Positions 30,131 through 57,997 of a stretch of 64,000 bases of DNA are shown here, in pieces. The notes below the pieces were generated by a model. That model was not told the origin of the DNA. It made no database searches and saw only the letters and a list, made by a program, of their open reading frames with translations. This DNA is from Octopus sinensis. Its lineage: Eukaryota. The DNA is taken from assembly GCF_006345805.1 (NCBI RefSeq), contig NC_042999.1:82088001-82152000 (forward strand), written 5' to 3'. The position numbers and the translations under genes are program-made. Within the stretch, counting starts at the first letter, position 1. Every line of letters begins with the position of its first letter.

Positions 30131-31430
30131 CAATAATAGTAAATAAATAAACAAAATTACAAAATATACCACTTTTGGTAGGAGATAAATTCTACCACAT
30201 ATGTTGAAGGAAATTATAAAAGAGCTTCTGGGTAAACAACATTCTTTGTTTTCTGGTCCGGACCATAGACAAATAAGTGTTGCAAACTACCTACCCTGGA
30301 GCAACCAACATAAAGTTGTCCACGAGAAAAGCAAGCCAGTAGATTTCAAAGACTGCCCTTGAGCTTTGTTAATTGATATTGCAAAGCGAAGTTGCACAGG
30401 GAATTGTGCTCGTTTGAACTCAAATAGCATGTCTGTTGGTTTGATTGGAATTCTTGGAATGAAAGCCTCTTCCCCAGAGACACATCTATTGATGATGGTA
30501 GCTTCTGTAACTTTAGGTGGTAATGTCTTCACAATCAACCATGTCCCATTGCATCATTTAGGAGGATCTAAATTTCTTAGAAGCATTATTGGGACTCCTA
30601 ACTTCACAAAAAGTTTATGTGGAGGAGTTCCAGGTAGCTCAAGAGAATTAAGGAACTCTGTTAGTAATGAATAGCTTGATTTTCATCAAAGACTGAATTA
30701 TCTGATTTGTACTTTTTAATGACTGTTGTAATCTTATTCATTAATTCATGGTTAATCCTTGCTACTGTCTCATTTTTTGGCGCAAGAATTACCCTTTCGC
30801 AGCCATTTATGTGTATTATAATTATTACTTAATATCTTGTTCTTCAATTCAGCTGGGGAATTGATCATGATAGCAATATGAGCCAAAGTGATATCAGCAT
30901 TCCCATCAAATGGTACTTACTCATTTTCTAATTGGAGGAGCCAGGTTGAAAACTGTTTTGCACATTGGTCCGCATGTAATAAAGCACACACATTAGTAGT
31001 TAAGGTGAATTTCTGTACTTTATTCCATAGGTGTGAAGATTTAATGCATGGTTTTATTTCATCAAATCTTGATCGTCTCGGAATGACTGATAATGTCTGT
31101 CTGAAATCTCCTGATAAAACTGATGTTTATTGTTGCCTCTGATGTCCTGTAAAGTCTTACCAAGTGCTTCAATTGCACCTCTATGTGACATGGTGCATTC
31201 ATCCCAAATGATAAGGTGGCATCGGCACAACACTTCTGGTGAACCTCAATCTTTGCTTATGTTACAAATTGGACTGTCATTTGTGACCAGTTTTAATGAT
31301 AATTTCAAAACAGAAGGAACTGTTCGCCCCTTGGAGAGAAGCAATGTTACAAATGTTTTACCTGTACCACCAGGAGCATCAAGAAAGAAAATCCCTCTAC
31401 TTTTTTCTGGCGATTGTGGAACACTACAAG
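29978..31430 (-). mobile_element. Helitron relic with 3' terminus
   Basis: PIF1-type helicase relic, then on the minus strand a degenerate hairpin cctgggcaatgccgg (29991-30005) about 10 nt before CTTG|T (decayed CTAG). Confidence 0.8.
30214..31425 (-). pseudogene. Helitron RepHel PIF1-like helicase domain, disrupted
   Basis: FFLDAPGGTGKTF (Walker A), LIIWDECTMSH (Walker B), GDFRQTL, FKRAQFPVQLRFAISINKAQGQSLK, GQLYVGCSRVG, KNVVYPEALL*; deletions and stops. Confidence 0.9.
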
Positions 31431-32694
31431 CACACACACGCACACACACACACACACACACAGTATCAAACCTCAGATGAAATGGGCGTGTGTGTGTGAA
31501 AGAGAGTGAGTAAAAGGGTGTGCTGTCATGTATATGTACATGCATAAAGAAATAGGCATTCATCATTCTTGTGTGTGAGAGGGAGAGTGCCACTTAGACT
31601 TCATTCTTCCTCGATCTCACAAACACACACACACACATGCATAGAAAAAGTTGTACACATATGTATTTATGTGTGTACGTATACATAACAACACACCACT
31701 TTAAACAGATATACACATACATAAATGTATACAAACGTACATACAAAAACACACGTGTGTGTATGACACACTTGCGTGTGTGACTGGCTACAAATGTATA
31801 GAGCTGAACACTGCATGCAAAAGGGAAATATATTTTTAAAATTTTACGGAAATTAACGAAGTGTTTGAGTTCAGAAAGAAATGAAACCTGGAGAGAGAGA
31901 GAAAGAGAGGGTATGATGTGTATGTGTGTGTGAGAGAGAGAGAGAGAAAGAAAGAGAGAATATTACAAACAATGAATGAGATAAACGTGGAATGTAAAAA
32001 TCATATAAATAAAAGCACGTTAAAAAATATCTTGTACCAAATATTTAAGTTTGTAAACTACATAAATGTTTCTTTCAGTAATTTGTTGTAGTTGTTTACA
32101 AATAGCGAACATTAAAATGGAGACTGAGAGACTGCCGTTTTTACGTCAATACCGGAAGTTGTCATTGAGACACATTTGTACAGATGTGTATCATAAATAT
32201 ATAGCAATATTTGATATTTTTAATTTTAAAAAATCAAATGAAGGCCGTATTATGTGTCCGAGGTCAAATTATTCATGCATCATAAGTATGGAAGTAATTG
32301 GTGAAGCCGTTTTCACGTGAAAAGTGAATATACACACATCTCTTTTTTATATATTTTAGATATTTCTGGTTATGTTTTCACTGACGAATTGAGAGCGAGT
32401 TACAGCGCTGACCATGAAATCGTTTTGATATGCAACTGAAAATATTTTCTTTGCTCGTCTCCTCGACTTCAGCGCGTGTGTATATTTGACAAAGTAGTTT
32501 GACTTAAGCGACTCTTTCCATCGTGTGGCTTTACTTATAGTTAACAGCCTTTAATGTAATAATGTATATATCATATATTTATAGAATTATATATGTATAT
32601 ATATATGCATATATGGATACATGCATGCATATTTATATATATATATATAGATATAGATATAAATATAGATATAATATAGATATTTATATATATT

Positions 32695-33114: not shown

Positions 33115-33933
33115 CATATATGTTATACATATATATACATATATATATATGTATGTATACCTAAATATATATACATATATACATATACATACATGTGCGT
33201 ATGCGTGTGTGTGTGTATGTGTGTGTTTGCGTGTGTGTTTGTGTGGGTGTGCGTGTGTGTTTGTGTGTGTGTTTGCATGTGTGTTTGTGTGTTTGTGCGC
33301 GCGCCTGAAAATCCTGTGTGTCTACAGTGATAGAATATCAAACGATGCAACTAATATGGGTTGTTTATATATTTGAAAACATATTTCGGGTTTCCGTTTC
33401 AAACGGCAGATGAAGACTCTGAGAAAGAGAAAACCATGTAAATGTTTTGTGTCCCGTTTTCATTCCGTTTAACACTAAACTTGAGTTCTAAGTCTAAACT
33501 CTGACATCTAACCTTGCCAAAATATTAATTCCTAACTATTGACCCTAAAACTTCACTCTTTTTTTTTTCTGTTTTTTTTTTTTTGTAATCATAATCTCTT
33601 ATGCTTAAAATAATTCTGATAGAAATATTTTAGGAACATTTCAGAAATGAAATTGTCAAGAAATTTCAGAGTAATAGAAAATGATAAATAATAAACAATT
33701 TGAAATTTTCCGTTGGAACAAAAACAATTCCTGCTGACACAATAATAAGGAAGTTTGAAAAAAAACCTTTAATAAAAAAGATTCAATTGTTGAAAACGGT
33801 AAAGTATTCAGCATCATTAATTGCTTAAAACTCTGTTAATACGCAGAAATATGCACAAATAAAAGTACGTTAGTTATACATACACATGCACACACACGCA
33901 TGTATGTATGCATGTATATGTACATATATATTA

Positions 33934-51467: not shown

Positions 51468-51828
51468 TCTTTTATTTGCTTCAGTCATTTGACTGCGGTC
51501 ATACCGGATCACCGCTCTTAGTCGAAAAAATCAACCCAAGGACTTATTCTATGTAAGCCTAGTAATTATCCCATCGGTCTCTTTTGTCGAACTGCTAGGT
51601 TACGTTGATGAAGTGCACCAAGCGATGGTGAGGGGTAGACAAACACAGACACACAAACATATACACATCTATATATATATATATATACCACGGGCTTCTT
51701 TCAGTTTCCGTCTACCAAATCCACTCACAACGATTTGGTCGTCCCGAGGATACAGTAGACGGCACATTTCCAAGGTGCCACGCAGTTTGACTGAACCGAG
51801 AACCATGTAGTCGGTAAGGAAGCTACTT
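51465..51828 (-). mobile_element. Host SINE family A: body and tail, interrupted in the head
   Basis: Minus strand aagtagcttccttaccgactacatggttctcggttcagtc...gcaccttggaaa...gaagcaaataaaagaatg; continues the head at 57960-57997. Confidence 0.9.
51813..51828 (-). repeat. Target-site copy 1 (AAGTAGCTTCCTTACC)
   Basis: Plus strand ggtaaggaagctactt; one nt longer than the other three. Confidence 0.9.
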
Positions 51829-53857
51829 TATTTTATATAATTTTCCACTAGGGCAGCACACAGAGTAGTAGCTACGGGCTGGACAAGGACATTAATGGAT
51901 GATGGTGGTGGTGGATGAAGATGGTGATGGGAGAAGTCAAAAGCGCCCGCCGACTCTCGCTTCTCTAAAACAATGTTCAATAATTACATTTAATAAAAAT
52001 GTTCACAATGATCAAATTACATATTTTAGAGGAGGCATAAACCTCCTCTTCAACATGTTACAAAAATGTTCAACAATTCTCCCCGTCAGGTCCCCGAAGC
52101 AAATTGTCTTGCCGCCTGCAGACAACTCTGCGATGTCAAGTCGGGGCCTGCAAAGAGAAAAGTAAAATGTTTTCTCTCAAATGTCTCTGCGACCCTTGAC
52201 AAAATATCTTCCGTTACTTTTTCCGCAGCTACCCGCGGAGGCCATAACGGACTCCTTGAGCCGACCGTTCCCTTGCGTTCTCGGTCACCCAAGCCATTCA
52301 AAAACCTTTCTACCTCCTCTCCCTTGTGGTAAAGGAGGAGAAGCATCTCCTCTTCACAGGAAGGGACCTCACACTGCTCCGTCAGTGGCACACTTCCCGC
52401 TGACGGAGCCCTGTCCGCGGGTGGCACACATCCCACCCGCGGCTCCGTCGGCGACACAGAAACGTCAGCCGTCCGACCTCTCCTTTTTCTCCTCCTTCTT
52501 TTGGGGGAGACTGCTGACTCAGGGGACTCCGTCACCAGACACGGGGGATCGCTATCTCCCTCCGCCACCTGAGCGTTCTTTGGCGAGCAACCATTGTTGT
52601 TCGCCTGTCTCTTTCTTTTCGTGGAGGCAACCTCCTCCACGACTTCCACCGTCTCCCCCTCCAATGAGGGGGCGGCGGGCGTCTTTTCCCCTTCATGCTC
52701 CGGGGCACCACCACGGCCCCCGGGACAATTCCTCTTGATATGTCAGGGCTTCAGGCACAGGTGACACTTGGTGGGGCGACCCTCGAGTATCACCGGGTAC
52801 CTGTGCCCAGCCATTCTCAGGAAGTCCGGGAATTTCATTTCTCCCACGGCCACCAGTGTCCACAGGGTCAAAGTTGCCTTTGACCCCTCCCGGGCGACCG
52901 CGGGAGCCATTTTCACACTTAGTAGCCTGGGTCCGCCGTCCCCCAGGCCTCGCCGGATGGTCTTCTCGATCCATTCCGCCTCCGTGCCCGGGTCAGCCCA
53001 CAAACCCAGGCCCTTTTTACTTTTCTGCCACAATACGAGGGGAGGAACAAAATTTCCTCTCCCTCCAGTGGCTCGCTAGCAAATCTGCTAGCTTCCTCGG
53101 GGGTATTAAACAGCAACCACACCGTTGCAAATTTATTCCCCCGAGAAATAAACTTTATCGTTGGTAGGTGGTCCCTCAACTCTTTCTCTATGGTGCTCCT
53201 GTCGAAGAGGGCGATAGCTCCACGTGACCTAGAATAGGTTCGTAGGACCACCGTCCTCTTCTCAAGACTTTCAATCCACTGCTTGGGTGGGACAACCTCC
53301 CATTCCAAAGCAGTGGCTTCTTTTGTTGCCATGATTTTGAAAAAAAGTTCAACTAAAAGTTCAAAGTCCAATAAGAAAAAAACACAATGATAGAACAGAA
53401 AGACAGAACAGAGAAAAGGACGAAGGAAGACAGTTTAAATAATGGCAACACAGTTCTGCAACTGGTGATCCTCACGAAACAGGGTATTCCTAGTTGCAGC
53501 ACACTTGGTTCTCCGTGGTAAATCCAAGCACAATTGGTTCTCCGTGGTAAATCCAAGCGAACAAATTAATTTTTGAGGAGGGGCTATGCCTCTCAAAATA
53601 CACAATTCTCACTAAAAGGTGAGGCAATAAATATGCCAACAGGCAGAACAGATACATCCGAAGCACAGTGAAGCTTATTACGCGCAGAAAAAGTGTTAAC
53701 ACTAATTAACATTAATGCCAAAAAAGTATTAACGGCATGCAACAAACCTCACTATGCTTCTAAAAATATCCAAAATGTCATACCTGTTGCCATCAAGTGT
53801 TCAATATTTCACGTTAACACGTGACATTTGCCGGAGCAAAAAACAACACGTCTGTCT
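51829..53857 (-). mobile_element. ORF1-only L1/Tx1-like element, copy A (2029 bp)
   Basis: 525-nt 5' UTR, single ORF1-like frame, 257-nt 3' UTR with conserved terminal block and short A-rich end, bounded by target copies. Confidence 0.8.
52086..53332 (-). pseudogene. ORF1p-like protein A (~415 aa if repaired)
   Basis: MATKEATALEWE... start at 53332; 1-nt deletion near 52993; TGA inside the knuckle CHLCLKP*HIKRNC at 52743-52745; ends ARQFASGT*. Confidence 0.85.
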
Positions 53858-53872
53858 GGTAAGAAGCTACTT
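53858..53872 (-). repeat. Target-site copy 2 (AAGTAGCTTCTTACC)
   Basis: Plus strand ggtaagaagctactt. Confidence 0.95.
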
Positions 53873-55859
53873 TATTTCAACAATTTTGCCACTAGAGCAG
53901 CACACAGAGTAGCTACGGGCTGGACAAAGACATTAATGGATGATGGTGGTGGTGGATGAAGATGGTGATGGGAGAAGTCAAAAAGCGCCCGCCGACTCTT
54001 GCTTCTCTAAAACAATGTTCTTTTTTTCCAATAATTTTACAAAATTTCCAAAATTTTACAAAAATTCAAAAATTTCAAAAAAAATTCCAAATTTTACAAT
54101 TTACGATTTCAAAAGTTTTTCCAGAGGCAATAAACCTCTATCGCAATATAACCCAAATACAGGTTCACGTTACCTGACCGATGAACGCTCTTGCTTTAAT
54201 GACGCAATCGTTCTTCGTTAGGCCCCCGCATATAGGTATAACTTGCAAGACATCCTCCGGGAAAGAATTCTCGATCCTGCACATATCATTTTCGAGTAGG
54301 ACCTCCGCAGCCAGCTGCGAAGGCCACTCGGGATACTCCATGCAGGACCGAAGTCCCTCCCATTGGTTTCTCTTCCTCATCTTACCTATTTCATTCTCTA
54401 GTGTACCTCCTTTGTGGAAGAGGACCACATAATATTTCTCCGGCCCCACAACCACCGGAGGACACATGGGAGACGCCGTCTGCGTGTTACAATCCGCTGG
54501 CGGCGTTCCGTTTCTTTTCTTTCTTTTTTTCTTTTTACCCTGGGCCACGGGAGGCTGAGGCTCCGGCGTTGCACACGCCGGGTCCACTCTCTCTCCCGTA
54601 GCCTCCGGGTTCTTCAGCGGGTCACCATTGTCTCCCACTTTTCGCTTTCTCGTCTAGGAAGTCACCGCTTCCTCGCTCTGCTTCTCTCCCTCCACTGGTG
54701 GGGCAGGGAGAGGCTCTGATATCAACTGCTCCAGGATCCTACTCTTGTCCCTGGGGCAGTTCTTCTTAATGTGGCCGGTCTCCAAACACAAGTGACACTT
54801 GGGGGGGGCGTCCCTCAAGCATCATCGGATACTTGGACCCGGCCATCCTCAAAAAGTCCGGCAAAACCAGACTCTTGGCTGACTGGGTCCATAGAGTCAA
54901 AGTAGCCTTTGACCCCTCCCAATCAGCCGCAGGCTGCATTCTTACGTTCAGGATCTTGGCGCTACCACCACTCAGAACCCGGCGGATAGTATCTTCCACC
55001 CACTCGGGCTCAAAGCCGGGTGGCAGGCCGCAGACCCGTAATCTTATTAATTTTTCTCCCTTGTAGCTTGGGAGAAACAAAATCTCTTCGCCCTCAATGG
55101 GCTTGCTTGCGAAATTGCAAGCTGCTTTTGGGGAGTCAAACAGCAACCAAATCGTTGCGTATTTGGCTCCCCGTTGAATGTATGTAACGGCTGGCATATA
55201 GTCTGCCAGCTCGTTCATAATAGTGGCTTTCGGAAAAACCATTATGGTGTTGAGTGACTTTGAATAAGTCCTCAACACCACGGTTTTGTCCTCCAGCTCC
55301 TTCAGGTAACCCTTCGGAGGTGTTAACTCCCATATGGTTAACTCCTTTTTTGCCATAACAAAAGTCCAATAATAAAAAAATAAAAAACACAATGACGGAA
55401 CAGAAAGACAGAGCAGAGAAAAGGACGAAGGAAGACAGTTCAAATAATGGCAACACAGTTCTGCAACTGGTAATCCTCACGAAACAGGGTACTCCAGTTG
55501 CAGCACACTTGGTTCTCCGTGGTAAATCCAAGCACAATTGGTTCTCCGTGGTAAATCCAAGCGAACAAATTAATTTTTGAGGAGGGGCTATGCCTCTCAA
55601 AACACACAATTCTCACTAAAAGGTGAGACAATAAATATGCCAACAGGCAGAACAAATACCTCCGAAGCAAAGTGAAGCTTGTTACGCGCAGAAAAGTGTT
55701 AACACTAATTAACATTAATGCCAAAAAAGTATTAACGGCATGCAACAAACCTCACTATGCTTCTAAAAATATCCAAAATGTCATACCTGTTGCCGAAAAT
55801 GTTCAATAATTCACGTTAACACGTGACATTTGCCGGAGCAAAAAACAGCATGTCTGTCT
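53873..55859 (-). mobile_element. ORF1-only L1/Tx1-like element, copy B (1987 bp)
   Basis: Same architecture; 5' UTR and 3' block very similar to copy A. Confidence 0.8.
54165..55356 (-). pseudogene. ORF1p-like protein B (~396 aa if repaired)
   Basis: MAKKELTIWE... start at 55356; +1 in the G8 run at 54801-54808 before CHLCLETGHIKKNC; TAG at 54654-54656; ends ARAFIGQVT*. Confidence 0.85.
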
Positions 55860-55874
55860 GGTAAGAAGCTACTT
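55860..55874 (-). repeat. Target-site copy 3 (AAGTAGCTTCTTACC)
   Basis: Plus strand ggtaagaagctactt. Confidence 0.95.
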
Positions 55875-57959
55875 TATTTTATTTTATTTGCCACTTAGGG
55901 CATCACACAGAGATAGCGGTAGCTCCGGGCTGGACAGGGACATTAATGGATTATGGTAATGATGGATGAAAATGGTGATGGGAGAAGTCAGAAGCGCCCG
56001 TCGACCTCTGCTTCTCTAATACAATGTTCTTTTTACAATGTTTTTAAATTTTACAAAATTCAAAATTCAAAAATTTCAGAAAATAACAGTGTTCAATGAA
56101 TACATTTAGTAAAATGTTCAAAAATGTTCAAAATGTTCAAATTACATTTTTTCAGACGAGGTGATAAACCTCCTCTTCAACATGTTTAAAAATGTTCAAA
56201 ATGTTCAAAAAGTGTTCAACAATTCTCCCCGTCAGGTCCCCCAAGCAAATTGTCTTGCCGGCTGCAGACAACTCTGCGACGACAAGTCGGGGCCTGCGAA
56301 GAGAAAGGTAAAGTGCCTTCTTTCAAAGGTCTCTGCGACCCTTGATAAGATAGCCTCCGTTACCCTTTCCGCAGCTACCCGCGGAGGCCATAACGGATTT
56401 CTTGAGCCGACCGCGCCCTTGCGCTCTCGGTCGCTCAAGCCATTCAAGAAATCTTCCACCTCCTCTCCCTTGTGGTAGAGGAGGAGAAGCATCTCCTCTT
56501 CACAGGAAGGGACCTCCAGTGGCTCACTTCCTACTGGCGGAGCCTTGTCCGCGGGTGGCACACATCCCACCCGCGGCCTCGTCGGCGACACAGAAACGTC
56601 AGACGTCCGACCTCTCCTTTTTCTCCTCCTTCTTTTGGGGGAGACTGCTAACCCAGGGGACTCCCCCTCCGCCCCCTGAGCGTTCTTTGGTGGGCAACCA
56701 CTGTTGCTCGCCAGCCTCTTTCTTTTCGTGGAGGCAACCTCCTCCACGACTTCCACCGTCTCCCCCTCCAATGAGGGGACGGCGGGCACCTTTTCCTTTT
56801 CATGTTCTGGGGCGGCACCACGGCCCCCGGGACACTTCTTCTTAATATGTCCAGGCTCCGAGCACCGGTGACACTTGGTGGGGCGTCCCTCAAGCATCAC
56901 CGGGTACCTGGACCCGGCCATCTTCAGGAAGTCCGGAAAAACCAGACTCTTGGCCGACTGGGTCCACAGAGTCAAAGTGGCCTTTGACCCTTCCCAGTTA
57001 GCCGCAGGCTGCATTTTAACGTTGAGGATCTTGGCGTCCCTGTCACCCAGCCCCCGGCGGACAGAGTCTTCTATCCACTCGGGTTCAAAGCCGGGCGGCA
57101 GGCCACAGACCCACAAACGTAACAGTTTTTCCCCCCTGTAACTGGGGAGAAACAGAATTTCATTGCCCTCAATGGGCTGGCTTGCACATTTGCAAGCTTC
57201 TTCGGCGGAGTCAAATAGCAACCAGACCGTTGCGTACTTGACCCCCCCGTTGTATATGTTTAACGGCTGGCATATAATCAATGGTATCTCTCGGAAAGAC
57301 CATTATGGTGTCGAGTACCTTTGAAAATGTTCTCAGCACCACGGTTCTTTCCTCAAGATCATGTAAATATTTTTTTGGGAGGTGCCAACTCCCACACAGT
57401 AAAATTCCTTGCCTTCGCCATAACGTAAAATACAATAGTTCAATAATAACTAAATTTAGCCACAGAAAGGAGAATAAAAATGTAACAGAAGGGAAGAAAA
57501 AATAAAAATGGCAGTTCAAAAAGGTTTTTAACAAATAAATGATAGAAGAGAAAGAGAGTTCAAATTAGGCAAAGGAATTCAGTTTTCTTTTTTTCTCACT
57601 TCTTCGGCCAGAATGTAATCCGTGCCAAATGCATTGGTAAGACCCTTGGTAAACAATCCTTGGTAATCCCGTGGACACACAATGACGATTTCACAATAAT
57701 CTCTTCAGCCGGACCAAGCCGCTTCAAAAATACAATTTCTTTCGCTCGACACAGGCAGAAAAATTACACTCGGAGAAAAGTGGAGCCTTATTACTTGCTA
57801 AAAAATATTAAACGTTAAAAAACATTCATGCAAGCAATAAAGCTTCACTAAACCCACAAAAACACAAAATTCCTACCTTTAGTCGAGACGACAGTTCAAT
57901 ATTTCACGTTGAAACAACGAGACATCGGAGCAGCAAAAAACACGTCTAACTCAGACGAA
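55875..57959 (-). mobile_element. ORF1-only L1/Tx1-like element, copy C (2085 bp)
   Basis: Same architecture; diverged 5' UTR; (TAAAA)n-like 3' end. Confidence 0.8.
56232..57421 (-). pseudogene. ORF1p-like protein C (395 aa if two homopolymer +1 indels are removed)
   Basis: MAKARNFTVWE... start at 57421; T7 run 57370-57376 and C7 run 57242-57248 each one base too long; intact CHRCSEPGHIKKKC; no in-frame stop in the 349-aa distal frame. Confidence 0.85.
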
Positions 57960-57997
57960 GGTAAGAAGCTACTTACTACACAGCCACCCCTGCGCTT
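57960..57997 (-). mobile_element. Host SINE family A 5' head, including target-site copy 4 (57960-57974)
   Basis: Minus strand agcgcaggggtggctgtgtagt-aagtagcttcttacc matches the heads at 8532, 18460 and 21540. Confidence 0.9.

What the first reader, a model, noticed from the sequence alone, without database searches (positions are those of the whole stretch)
51813..57974. Three ~2-kb retroelements inserted in tandem at one site in a SINE's tRNA head
Seen: removing 51829-57974 restores a family A SINE (gtggctgtgtagt-aagtagcttc(c)ttacc-gactacatggttctcggttcagtc). The 15-mer AAGTAGCTTCTTACC occurs at all four junctions (57960, 55860, 53858, and 51813 with one extra C). The units are 2029, 1987 and 2085 bp, in the same orientation as the SINE, each ending in a short A-rich tail. 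They are too diverged for a recent duplication: hand counts give 66-79% amino-acid identity in the N-terminal half, with synonymous changes seen. Established: target-primed insertion duplicates the target, and Tx1-clade L1 elements (Tx1, Keno, Dewa, Mutsu etc.) are sequence-specific for multicopy RNA genes or repeats. Inference: a family that uses the abundant SINE head, between A and B boxes, as its landing site and re-targets it because each insertion regenerates the site. I know of no described cephalopod case.
Basis: partly seen in the sequence, partly recalled or inferred. Interest (0 to 1): 0.92.

Follow-up and report, generated by a model that had tools for sequence, protein, structure and literature searches.

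The report
SINE-targeting ORF1-only retroelements in tandem
Three diverged copies of a small octopus retroelement that carries only the first LINE gene lie head to tail at one 15-16-base spot inside a SINE, and copies at two other octopus loci use the same spot, so this is a site-specific "safe-haven" insertion habit of a kind already known from Tx1-type elements in vertebrates.

Summary
On the minus strand, three units (2085, 1987 and 2029 bp) are separated by exact copies of AAGTAGCTTCTTACC. A 16-mer variant closes the array, and joining the flanks restores an abundant octopus SINE.

Each unit has a 5'UTR, one broken ORF (two RRM-like domains, a CCHC knuckle and a C-terminal part), an AT-rich 3'UTR and a conserved ~155-nt 3' block ending in AAATA. 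None has an RT or endonuclease gene, LTRs or TIRs.

The units are not in-situ duplicates. Between them dS is 0.5-2.7 and dN/dS is 0.1-0.3. Their modules have conflicting relationships, yet the 15-mers are identical.

Two non-orthologous loci confirm the target. An O. sinensis copy has its 5' junction at the same SINE position. A 5'-truncated O. bimaculoides copy has the identical 3' junction.

The ORF is homologous to ORF1 of autonomous octopus LINEs (APE + RT + zf-RVT, closest to L1 ORF2p), one of which also forms a tandem array.

Best reading: an ORF1-only ("half-LINE") non-autonomous, target-specific non-LTR family that re-inserts into the regenerated site. Precedents are Tx1-Mar/SINEU-3 in crocodilians and HAL1. 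The autonomous partner, Tx1 clade membership and a genome-wide census remain untested.

Interest is moderate.

The parts
57975..57996 (-). Host SINE, 5' part of the head (consensus positions ~1-22, includes the A-box-like TGGCTGTGTAG) upstream of the insertion site
   Evidence: Alignment of the joined flanks with other SINE copies and with the rough consensus
57960..57974 (-). Target-site copy 1 (15-mer AAGTAGCTTCTTACC), upstream of unit 1
   Evidence: Exact pattern match; sequence
55875..57959 (-). Unit 1 (2085 bp): 5'UTR 57433-57959, unrelated to that of units 2 and 3. ORF 56232-57432, with one frameshift in a C7/G7 run near 57243-57249. AT-rich 3'UTR, then 3' block 55875-56036 ending AAATA
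55860..55874 (-). Target-site copy 2 (15-mer) between units 1 and 2
   Evidence: it is the only terminal direct repeat of a unit
53873..55859 (-). Unit 2 (1987 bp): 5'UTR 55357-55859, 95% identical to unit 3. ORF 54165-55356, with a frameshift in the G8/C8 run at 54801-54808 and a premature TAG at 54654-54656. Its C-terminal part is unalignable with units 1 and 3. 3' block 53873-54024
53858..53872 (-). Target-site copy 3 (15-mer) between units 2 and 3
51829..53857 (-). Unit 3 (2029 bp): 5'UTR 53333-53857. ORF 52086-53332, with a frameshift near 52990 and a premature TGA at 52743-52745 inside the CCHC knuckle. Its C-terminal part is 91% identical to unit 1. 3' block 51829-51983
51813..51828 (-). 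Target-site copy 4 (16-mer AAGTAGCTTCCTTACC). It keeps the ancestral 16-nt length of the SINE site
51483..51812 (-). Host SINE, remainder: GACTACATGGTTCTCGGTTCAGTC (B-box-like), body, (TA)n and tail

Best explanation
The three units are independent insertions of diverged members of one family of non-autonomous, ORF1-only non-LTR retrotransposons ('half-LINEs'). The family integrates, by target-primed reverse transcription, at one defined position in the head of an abundant octopus SINE.

Shown:
- The bottom-strand nick falls exactly between ...GTGT(A/G)GT and AAGTAGCTT. The second-strand break falls 15-16 nt downstream, before (G/A)AC(T/C)ACA.
- A full-length insertion therefore duplicates the 15-16-mer and leaves two intact copies of the site, each of which can be hit again.
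- The family diversified as active lineages, with its ORF under purifying selection and with exchange of whole modules (5'UTR, ORF C-part).
- The copies here are now dead: one frameshift in each, plus a premature stop in units 2 and 3.

Inferred:
- Endonuclease and reverse transcriptase come in trans from an unidentified autonomous L1/Tx1-type octopus LINE. That LINE's APE endonuclease recognises the SINE sequence, and its RT recognises the conserved ~155-nt 3' block ending AAATA. The lack of poly(A) points to 'stringent' 3'-end recognition, possibly helped by read-through SINE sequence annealing to the nicked target.
- The retained RRM-RRM-CCHC protein acts in cis as the RNA chaperone or packaging factor.
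- Unit 3 probably entered first. Its downstream site keeps the ancestral 16 nt, and the upstream copy then lost one C before units 2 and 1 entered.
- Landing in SINE copies is a safe-haven strategy. It also splits the A-box-like motif from the B-box-like motif, so it should inactivate the hit SINE copy.
For: Anatomy and exact junctions. There are no LTRs or TIRs, and the 15-mer is the only terminal repeat.

Independent origin of the units:
- In the RRM-RRM-CCHC part, dN/dS is 0.10-0.31 with dS 0.55-2.7.
- The similarity is mosaic. 5'UTR: u2-u3 95% against ~54% to u1. ORF N-part: u1-u2 79%. ORF C-part: u1-u3 91% against ~47% to u2. 3' block: 85-94% in all pairs.
- Meanwhile three 15-mers are identical. 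At the units' synonymous divergence, a neutral 15-mer would stay identical between two copies with probability <0.001.

Same site elsewhere:
- L001 (O. sinensis CM016886.1) reads ...GGCTGTGTGGTAAGTAGCTTGCTTCC|element 5' end.
- L051 (O. bimaculoides CM046628.1) reads SINE head-AAG|138-bp 5'-truncated copy...GAAATA|AAGTAGCTTGCTTATC AACCACATGG.
- Their flanks are not collinear with the window.
- 5' truncation with microhomology is a TPRT hallmark.

LINE affinity:
- The ORF aligns over RRM1-RRM2-CCHC with ORF1 of full-length elements carrying Exo_endo_phos + RVT_1 + zf-RVT. Their best solved relatives are L1 ORF2p, E~1e-39.
- The AF2 model of P0001 has two RRM-like domains, and its Foldseek top hits are the tandem-RRM proteins NONO/SFPQ/hnRNP A1 UP1. 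There is a weak zf-CCHC match.
- A related autonomous family also forms a tandem array of diverged members (L002).

Literature precedents:
- Tx1-Mar and SINEU-3 insert at a ~16-bp site of Mariner-N4_AMi, with tandem insertions sandwiching a TSD (PMC4494074).
- HAL1 is an ORF1-only L1 derivative (PMC5753468).
- 13 recently active L1-Tx1 families are reported in O. vulgaris (PMC13282606).
Against: - Only 5 insertion events at 3 loci were seen. No octopus genome could be searched by DNA, so the fraction of copies in SINE heads is unknown.
- No autonomous element sharing the 3' block was found in ~230 kb of octopus DNA on hand, so trans-mobilisation is inferred.
- No RT is available for the family, so the Tx1 assignment is untested. 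The RT search returned no Tx1-named proteins.
- The O. sinensis copy is annotated as a gene (LOC115225585), which leaves room for a gene-retrocopy reading.
- The array rests on one assembly, and read support was not checked.
- The hairpin around the site is not better than shuffles, so a structural-recognition idea has no support.
Confidence: 0.8

Rival explanations
1. Tandem segmental duplication: a single insertion plus its TSD was duplicated twice in place (unequal crossing-over or replication slippage), and the copies then diverged.
For: Head-to-tail arrangement with the same 15-mer at every junction. Adjacent units 2 and 3 share a 95% identical 5'UTR.
Against: dS is 0.5-2.7 with dN/dS 0.1-0.3 between units, so the divergence happened under selection on a working ORF and not in a dead array. 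The 5'UTR of unit 1 and the ORF C-part of unit 2 are unalignable with the others. The 15-mers are identical although they would have decayed at the neutral rate. Independent loci show the same insertion site.
Confidence: 0.03
2. Site-specific insertion is real, but the array was assembled by ectopic or unequal recombination between different occupied SINE copies (or by assembly mis-joining), not by repeated insertion at this locus.
For: Module shuffling shows that recombination occurs within the family. Read-level support for the array was not checked.
Against: Only the 15-mer lies between units, with no duplicated SINE head or body. Recombination would have had to occur within 15 bp each time. 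The units are too different for assembly collapse or expansion. A comparable array of diverged full-length relatives exists in another assembly (L002). Tandem insertions sandwiching a TSD are the documented outcome for Tx1-Mar/SINEU-3 (PMC4494074).
Confidence: 0.06
3. The units are processed retrocopies of cellular, ORF1-derived genes (a domesticated RRM-CCHC gene family), passively mobilised by a SINE-site-specific LINE. On this reading they are not members of a self-perpetuating transposon family.
For: The units have no RT or EN. The ORF shows purifying selection. The O. sinensis copy is annotated as a protein-coding gene.
Against: There is no poly(A) tail. A non-coding 3' block is conserved at 85-94% while coding parts are at 46-79%, which is the pattern of an RT-recognition element. 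Several deeply diverged lineages exchange modules. Every copy seen, including P0001's own locus, sits in the SINE site, so no 'parent gene' locus outside a SINE has been seen.
Confidence: 0.08
4. A variant of the mechanism: targeting is mainly RNA-guided and not protein-guided. Transcripts read through into the downstream SINE part, and that sequence anneals to SINE DNA at a nick or break, so any LINE RT could place the element there.
For: Every copy is followed by the SINE remainder, so read-through RNAs would carry AAGTAGCTT.... The 3' junction is precise to the base at four of four 3' ends, and there is no poly(A). Co-transcribed target sequence is known to sharpen integration in R2/R1-type elements (as discussed in PMC4494074).
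Against: The AATAAA-like signals in the A-rich tail ahead of the AAATA terminus suggest defined RNA 3' ends. The constant second-strand position (a 15-16-bp TSD at full-length insertions) fits a sequence-specific endonuclease better. Target specificity in Tx1 and R1 clades is attributed to the APE endonuclease (PMC4640811).
Confidence: 0.2

Closest known systems
Tx1-Mar LINE families and their partner SINEU-3 in crocodilians (Kojima 2015, PMC4494074)
   Same: APE-type non-LTR elements and a non-autonomous partner insert at one ~16-bp sequence inside an abundant, dead transposon. Tandem insertions sandwiching a TSD are frequent. The safe-haven logic is the same.
   Different: There the target is a DNA transposon (Mariner-N4_AMi), not a SINE head. 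There the non-autonomous partner is a short snRNA-headed SINE with no ORF, while here it is a 2-kb element that keeps a selected ORF1. The host is a cephalopod. Tx1 clade membership is not shown here.
Tx1L of Xenopus laevis inserted in Tx1D, and other Tx1-clade specialists such as Keno (U2 snRNA), Kibi and Koshi (microsatellites), as listed in PMC4494074.
   Same: Sequence-specific integration into multicopy targets by L1-group elements. ORF1 of the RRM + CCHC type (this point from my own knowledge of ORF1p classes).
   Different: Those are autonomous elements with ORF2. Their targets are RNA genes, microsatellites or a piggyBac derivative. No RT exists here for a phylogenetic placement.
HAL1 ('half-L1') of mammals (PMC5753468, citing Smit 1999 and Bao & Jurka 2010)
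   Same: A non-autonomous LINE derivative that encodes only ORF1p and is presumed to borrow ORF2p in trans. It forms its own propagating lineages.
   Different: HAL1 derives from mammalian L1, whose ORF1p is the coiled-coil-RRM-CTD type. It is poly(A)-tailed and not target-specific. The octopus family has RRM-RRM-CCHC, no poly(A) and a fixed target.
R1/R2 and other rDNA- or tRNA-gene-specific non-LTR elements (PMC4640811)
   Same: Precise, orientation-specific insertion into a multicopy sequence, inactivating the hit copy.
   Different: Different clades and endonucleases (RLE for R2/NeSL). Their targets are functional RNA genes, not a SINE.

Membership tests
Non-LTR (LINE-type) retrotransposon insertion by TPRT | Target-site duplication of variable, roughly 5-20 bp length flanking the insert; no LTRs or TIRs | tested here: met
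   A 15/16-bp direct repeat lies at all four junctions. No other terminal direct or inverted repeats are present.
Non-LTR (LINE-type) retrotransposon insertion by TPRT | 5'-truncated copies sharing the 3' end | tested here: met
   L051 carries only the last 138 bp. It is joined to the target by AAG microhomology and has the same 3' junction.
Non-LTR (LINE-type) retrotransposon insertion by TPRT | Encodes a reverse transcriptase (autonomous element) | tested here: not met
   There is no ORF2 in any unit. tblastn with APE and RT of related LINEs finds nothing in the window. The units are therefore non-autonomous derivatives.
Non-LTR (LINE-type) retrotransposon insertion by TPRT | ORF1 homologous to ORF1 of bona fide LINEs | tested here: met
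   23-31% identity across RRM-RRM-CCHC to ORF1 of elements that continue into APE + RT ORF2 (L002, L003, L049).
Tx1 clade (L1 group) target-specific LINEs | RT-domain phylogeny places the element inside Tx1 | not testable with these tools
   The family has no RT. The relatives' RT is nearest to L1 ORF2p among solved structures and carries zf-RVT. No Tx1 reference sequences or Tx1-named hits were available.
Tx1 clade (L1 group) target-specific LINEs | APE-type endonuclease | tested here: not met
   Absent from the units themselves. Present in the ORF1-related autonomous elements (Exo_endo_phos).
Tx1 clade (L1 group) target-specific LINEs | Insertion at one specific sequence, in one orientation | tested here: met
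   5 of 5 insertion events (three in the window, plus L001 and L051) are at the same SINE position and in the same orientation. The sample is small and there is no genome census.
HAL1-like ORF1-only non-autonomous LINE derivative | Full ORF1, no ORF2, own 5' and 3' UTRs, architecture shared by diverged copies | tested here: met
   All three units share the ORF-stop-to-3'UTR layout despite dS >= 0.5.
HAL1-like ORF1-only non-autonomous LINE derivative | 3' end shared with an autonomous partner LINE | not testable with these tools
   No element with ORF2 and this 3' block occurs in the window or in eight octopod loci (~166 kb). Octopus genomes cannot be searched by DNA here.
HAL1-like ORF1-only non-autonomous LINE derivative | Derived from mammalian L1 (strict HAL1 membership) | tested here: not met
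   The host is a cephalopod and the ORF1 type is RRM-RRM-CCHC. It is analogous to HAL1, not a member.
tRNA-derived SINE (the target) | Multicopy short element with internal pol III A- and B-box motifs | tested here: inconclusive
   At least 7 copies occur in the window and more in other loci. TGGCTGTGTGG matches the A-box consensus at 10/11 and GGTTCAGTCCC matches the B-box consensus at 9/11, both by eye only.
tRNA-derived SINE (the target) | Head recognisable as a tRNA | tested here: not met
   ARAGORN finds no tRNA in the window. Rfam lists no tRNA match at E <= 10 in a 95%-consensus copy.

The most novel reading that the evidence does not exclude
This is an undescribed cephalopod lineage in which a LINE has shed ORF2 but keeps ORF1 under selection, and specialises in the head of a SINE. 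That would be a three-tier arrangement: a non-autonomous retroelement living inside a non-autonomous retroelement. Its targeting would be partly RNA-guided by read-through SINE sequence, and 5'UTR and ORF modules would be swapped among lineages.
Probability: 0.3. Interest if true: 0.65.

Novelty: new variant of a known kind. Interest (0 to 1): 0.5.

Why it matters
Target-specific retrotransposons are the natural models for programmable, RNA-templated DNA insertion, and they show how parasites limit harm to their host.

This case adds three things:
- a new target class, the head of a SINE that makes up roughly a tenth of octopus genomes;
- a new host group, cephalopods;
- an ORF1-only architecture whose ORF was kept under purifying selection.

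The last point speaks to the open question of what ORF1p does in cis when ORF2p is supplied in trans.

It also has practical consequences. It explains nested SINE/LINE annotations in octopus repeat libraries. It gives a clean marker system (occupied versus empty SINE heads) for octopod phylogeny and for dating insertions.

It does not overturn anything. The principle was established for Tx1-type elements in vertebrates.

Tried and rejected
- Protein searches with the 349-aa and 196-aa ORF pieces found one close relative only, P0001. The exhaustive HMMER search found 33 hits, all but P0001 at 49% identity or less, and the 20 whose source I looked up were octopod proteins or unnamed Logan/ENA contigs. 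A protein-based census is therefore impossible.
- The exact-ORF look-up of the window's own ORF is not on record.
- DNA pattern scans found nothing real. The metagenome scan gave 39 hits, all chance, with at most 24 nt of similarity. The prokaryote genome collection gave 1 chance hit. The viral collection gave 0.
- Pfam gives only a sub-threshold zf-CCHC match for the units. Rfam gives nothing meaningful in the region.
- tRNA identity of the SINE head is not supported by ARAGORN or Rfam.
- A hairpin or cruciform at the target as a recognition feature is no better than shuffles, with z-scores from -0.25 to -0.9.
- A consensus fold of the 3' block shows a plausible stem. With three sequences there is only one compensatory pair, which is not evidence.
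- I looked for a host exon in the window to fetch orthologous loci and test for an empty site. No convincing exon appears among ORFs of 110 aa or more.
- I tried to name the clade of the related RT by annotation. No Tx1-labelled hits were returned.
- LTR-element and DNA-transposon readings are rejected, because the units have no LTRs or TIRs.
- A SINE copy in L053 that starts exactly at the target position has an unrelated upstream sequence. I treat it as a truncated SINE.

Full report
OBSERVATION. Everything lies on the minus strand. Reading 5'->3' on that strand:
- SINE head ...GCGCAGGGGTGGCTGTGTAGT (57996-57975);
- AAGTAGCTTCTTACC (57974-57960);
- unit 1 (57959-55875, 2085 bp);
- the same 15-mer (55874-55860);
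- unit 2 (55859-53873, 1987 bp);
- the 15-mer again (53872-53858);
- unit 3 (53857-51829, 2029 bp);
- AAGTAGCTTCCTTACC (51828-51813);
- GACTACATGGTTCTCGGTTCAGTC... and the rest of the SINE.

The 15-mer has exactly three matches in 64 kb, even when two mismatches are allowed. The expected count is 0.11, and 0 of 100 shuffles reached three. The joined flanks align end to end with six other SINE copies in the window. They are 87% identical to a rough consensus, with no gap when the 16-mer is used, so 16 nt is the ancestral length of the site.

ANATOMY OF A UNIT. From the alignment of the three units and the ORF list, each unit has:
- a ~500-bp 5'UTR;
- one ORF of about 400 codons;
- an AT-rich stretch of ~100-210 bp with short GAACATTTT/ACAAAATTT-like repeats;
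- a conserved ~155-nt 3' block that ends ...GTGGCAAA..(A/G)AAATA with no poly(A).

There are no LTRs or TIRs, and the only terminal repeat is the 15-mer. There is no second ORF. tblastn with the APE and RT of related LINEs finds nothing in the window.

All three ORFs are broken:
- unit 1 by one frameshift in a homopolymer run near 57243-57249;
- unit 2 by a frameshift in the run at 54801-54808 and a TAG at 54654-54656;
- unit 3 by a frameshift near 52990 and a TGA at 52743-52745.

WHAT THE PROTEIN IS. Pfam sees only a sub-threshold zinc knuckle. An exhaustive HMMER search finds one close relative, Octopus sinensis LOC115225585 (P0001, 65% identity). It also finds about 30 distant ones, mostly 23-31% identical over the matched stretch; the 20 whose source I looked up are octopod proteins or unnamed Logan/ENA contigs.

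The genomic loci of the distant relatives settle what they are. In L002 (O. sinensis) and L003, the homologous ORF is followed by an ORF2 that starts M..VGCLNV.GL and carries Exo_endo_phos, RVT_1 and zf-RVT. Its best solved relatives are L1 ORF2p, at E~1e-39, well ahead of R2. L049 carries the same ORF1-APE-RT order by tblastn.

The alignment shows a shared RRM-like / RRM-like / CCHC architecture. An AlphaFold model of P0001 has pLDDT of 77-94 over residues ~11-130. Its Foldseek top hits are tandem-RRM proteins: NONO/SFPQ and hnRNP A1 UP1. So the ORF is a LINE ORF1 of the RRM + zinc-knuckle type, and the units are ORF1-only derivatives.

ARE THE THREE UNITS INDEPENDENT INSERTIONS? Yes, on three grounds.

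(a) Codon-level comparison, with pieces aligned separately and no read-through, gives dS = 0.55-2.7 and dN/dS = 0.10-0.31 in the RRM-RRM-CCHC part. This holds for all pairs among units 1-3 and the O. sinensis copy. The divergence therefore accumulated while the ORF was functional, that is, before these copies landed here.

(b) The similarity is mosaic:

| Segment | u1-u2 | u1-u3 | u2-u3 |
|---|---|---|---|
| 5'UTR | 55% | 54% | 95% |
| ORF N-part | 79% | 66% | 63% |
| ORF C-part | 46% | 91% | 48% |
| 3' block | 85% | 87% | 94% |

No single duplication history fits these conflicting relationships. Exchange of modules between lineages does.

(c) The three 15-mers are identical. At K >= 0.5 substitutions per site, a neutral 15-mer would stay identical between two copies with probability about e^-7.5. 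The high conservation of the non-coding 3' block relative to the coding sequence is what one expects of the part recognised by the reverse transcriptase (inference).

IS THE SITE SPECIFIC? Two further loci say so.

L001 is O. sinensis CM016886.1, fetched through P0001. Unique DNA is followed by GGCTGAGGCATGGCTGTGTGGTAAGTAGCTTGCTTCC, and the element's 5'UTR follows immediately. This is the same position and orientation. The element is cut off downstream by an unrelated rearrangement.

L051 is O. bimaculoides CM046628.1, fetched for an unrelated reason. The 3' block hit it by chance: AGGCGCAGGAGTGGCTGTGTGGT-AAG | 138 bp of 3' block ...GGCAAATTAAAATGAAATA | AAGTAGCTTGCTTATC-AACCACATGGTTCCGGGTTCAGTCCC. 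This is a classic 5'-truncated TPRT product. Its 3' junction is identical to the base, and its 5' end is joined through AAG microhomology instead of a full TSD.

The flanks of both loci share only dispersed repeats with the window, so they are not orthologues of it. Five of five insertion events thus use one nucleotide position and one orientation. Most SINE copies seen are unoccupied, including two with the near-identical site AAGTAGCTTGCT(T/A)ACC. All three occupied SINEs have T at site position 4, where the majority consensus has A. This is a hint of sequence preference, not a significant one.

MECHANISM. The shown parts are these:
- The TSD is exactly 15/16 nt, because the bases beyond it differ between the element ends and the SINE.
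- The first (bottom-strand) nick therefore lies opposite GT|AAGTAG.
- The second break lies 15-16 nt downstream, before (G/A)AC(T/C)ACA.
- The 3' junction is invariant and the 5' junction is variable (L051), as expected for TPRT.
- A full-length insertion leaves two complete copies of the site.

The inferred parts are these:
- An autonomous L1/Tx1-type partner supplies a sequence-specific APE and an RT that recognises the 3' block.
- ORF1p acts in cis.
- Unit 3 came first, because only its downstream site keeps 16 nt. A C was then lost from the upstream copy before the other two insertions.

Insertion separates the A-box-like motif from the B-box-like motif and should silence that SINE copy. 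The two nick positions flank a segment bounded by an imperfect inverted repeat (TGTGGT/ACCACA). The hairpin is not better than shuffled controls, so I attach no weight to it.

A related autonomous family shows the same behaviour. L002 holds three ~5.3-kb full-length elements head to tail, 75-94% identical to each other, with a short shared motif (ACTGAATAC and context) at the junctions.

COMPARISON WITH WHAT IS KNOWN. Target-specific non-LTR elements fall mainly in the early-branching, Tx1 and R1 groups. Their known targets include rRNA, snRNA and tRNA genes, microsatellites, telomeres and other transposons (PMC4640811).

The closest precedent is in crocodilians. [quoted passage not shown] ORF1-only derivatives are known as HAL1 in mammals (PMC5753468). 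L1-Tx1 is annotated in O. vulgaris with 13 recently active families (PMC13282606).

I found no paper describing SINE-head targeting or ORF1-only elements in cephalopods. Repbase and Dfam could not be consulted. Membership in the Tx1 clade is not established: the family has no RT, and I could not build a reference phylogeny for its relatives. What it works like is clear. What it is, cladistically, is open.

LIMITS.
- There is no DNA search of octopus genomes, so no census and no partner.
- The collection scans returned only chance hits.
- There is no read-level check of the array.
- No empty-site allele could be sought, because the window holds no recognisable host exon to anchor orthologous loci.

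VERDICT. The element is best described as a target-specific, ORF1-only non-LTR retrotransposon family that nests repeatedly in one site of an abundant SINE. It is a new variant of a known kind and of moderate interest.

Noticed in passing
L002 1-12850 (O. sinensis CM016867.1:70972137-70984986, reversed): Head-to-tail array of three ~5.3-kb full-length LINEs (ORF1 RRM-RRM-CCHC; ORF2 APE + RT + zf-RVT), 75-94% identical to each other. Their 3' ends read ...GGGTAATAAAGAAATCA, and a shared motif (CTGAACTTT[C/G]ACC[A/G]ACTGAATAC) lies at the junctions. This looks like another target-specific family whose target I did not identify.
   Followed up: partly
L051 6915-7222 (O. bimaculoides CM046628.1): A 138-bp 5'-truncated copy of the family sits in a young SINE (97% to consensus) at the identical 3' junction. 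It was found by chance in a locus fetched for another protein, which suggests short copies may be common.
   Followed up: yes
L001 1-640 (O. sinensis CM016886.1): The C-terminal end of an ORF2 (50% identical to the L002 RT tail) and its 3'UTR ending ...AATAAAGAAATATGG. This is a further L1/Tx1-like LINE and is not in a SINE.
   Followed up: no
window 55502-55559 and 53500-53560: The 5'UTRs of units 2 and 3 contain a tandem 29-bp duplication (AGCACA[C/A]TTGGTTCTCCGTGGTAAATCCA x2). The AT-rich 3'UTRs contain short degenerate repeats (54010-54099).
   Followed up: no
window SINE copies at 33920, 8518, 18447, 21526, 59395, 12130; L051 18354; L052 19985: All three occupied SINEs have AAGTAGCTT (T at site position 4), whereas most unoccupied copies have AAGAAGCTT. 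This may be a preference for one SINE subfamily. The numbers are too small to test.
   Followed up: partly
window 31246-31593 (-): An ORF fragment containing FLDAPGGTGKTF, a P-loop motif that by eye resembles PIF1/Helitron helicases. Pfam gave no hit at E <= 0.01.
   Followed up: partly
protein P0063: A protein labelled 'MAG... Herbaspirillum sp.' is 53% identical to the cephalopod LINE RT tail (zf-RVT). This is probably eukaryotic contamination in a bacterial MAG.
   Followed up: no
L003-L009 (Logan contigs of runs SRR11869384-94): Contigs of 1.1-1.9 kb carry ORF1 homologues. L003 continues into the start of an ORF2, so related LINEs are represented in those sequencing runs. The species of the runs was not determined.
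   Followed up: no
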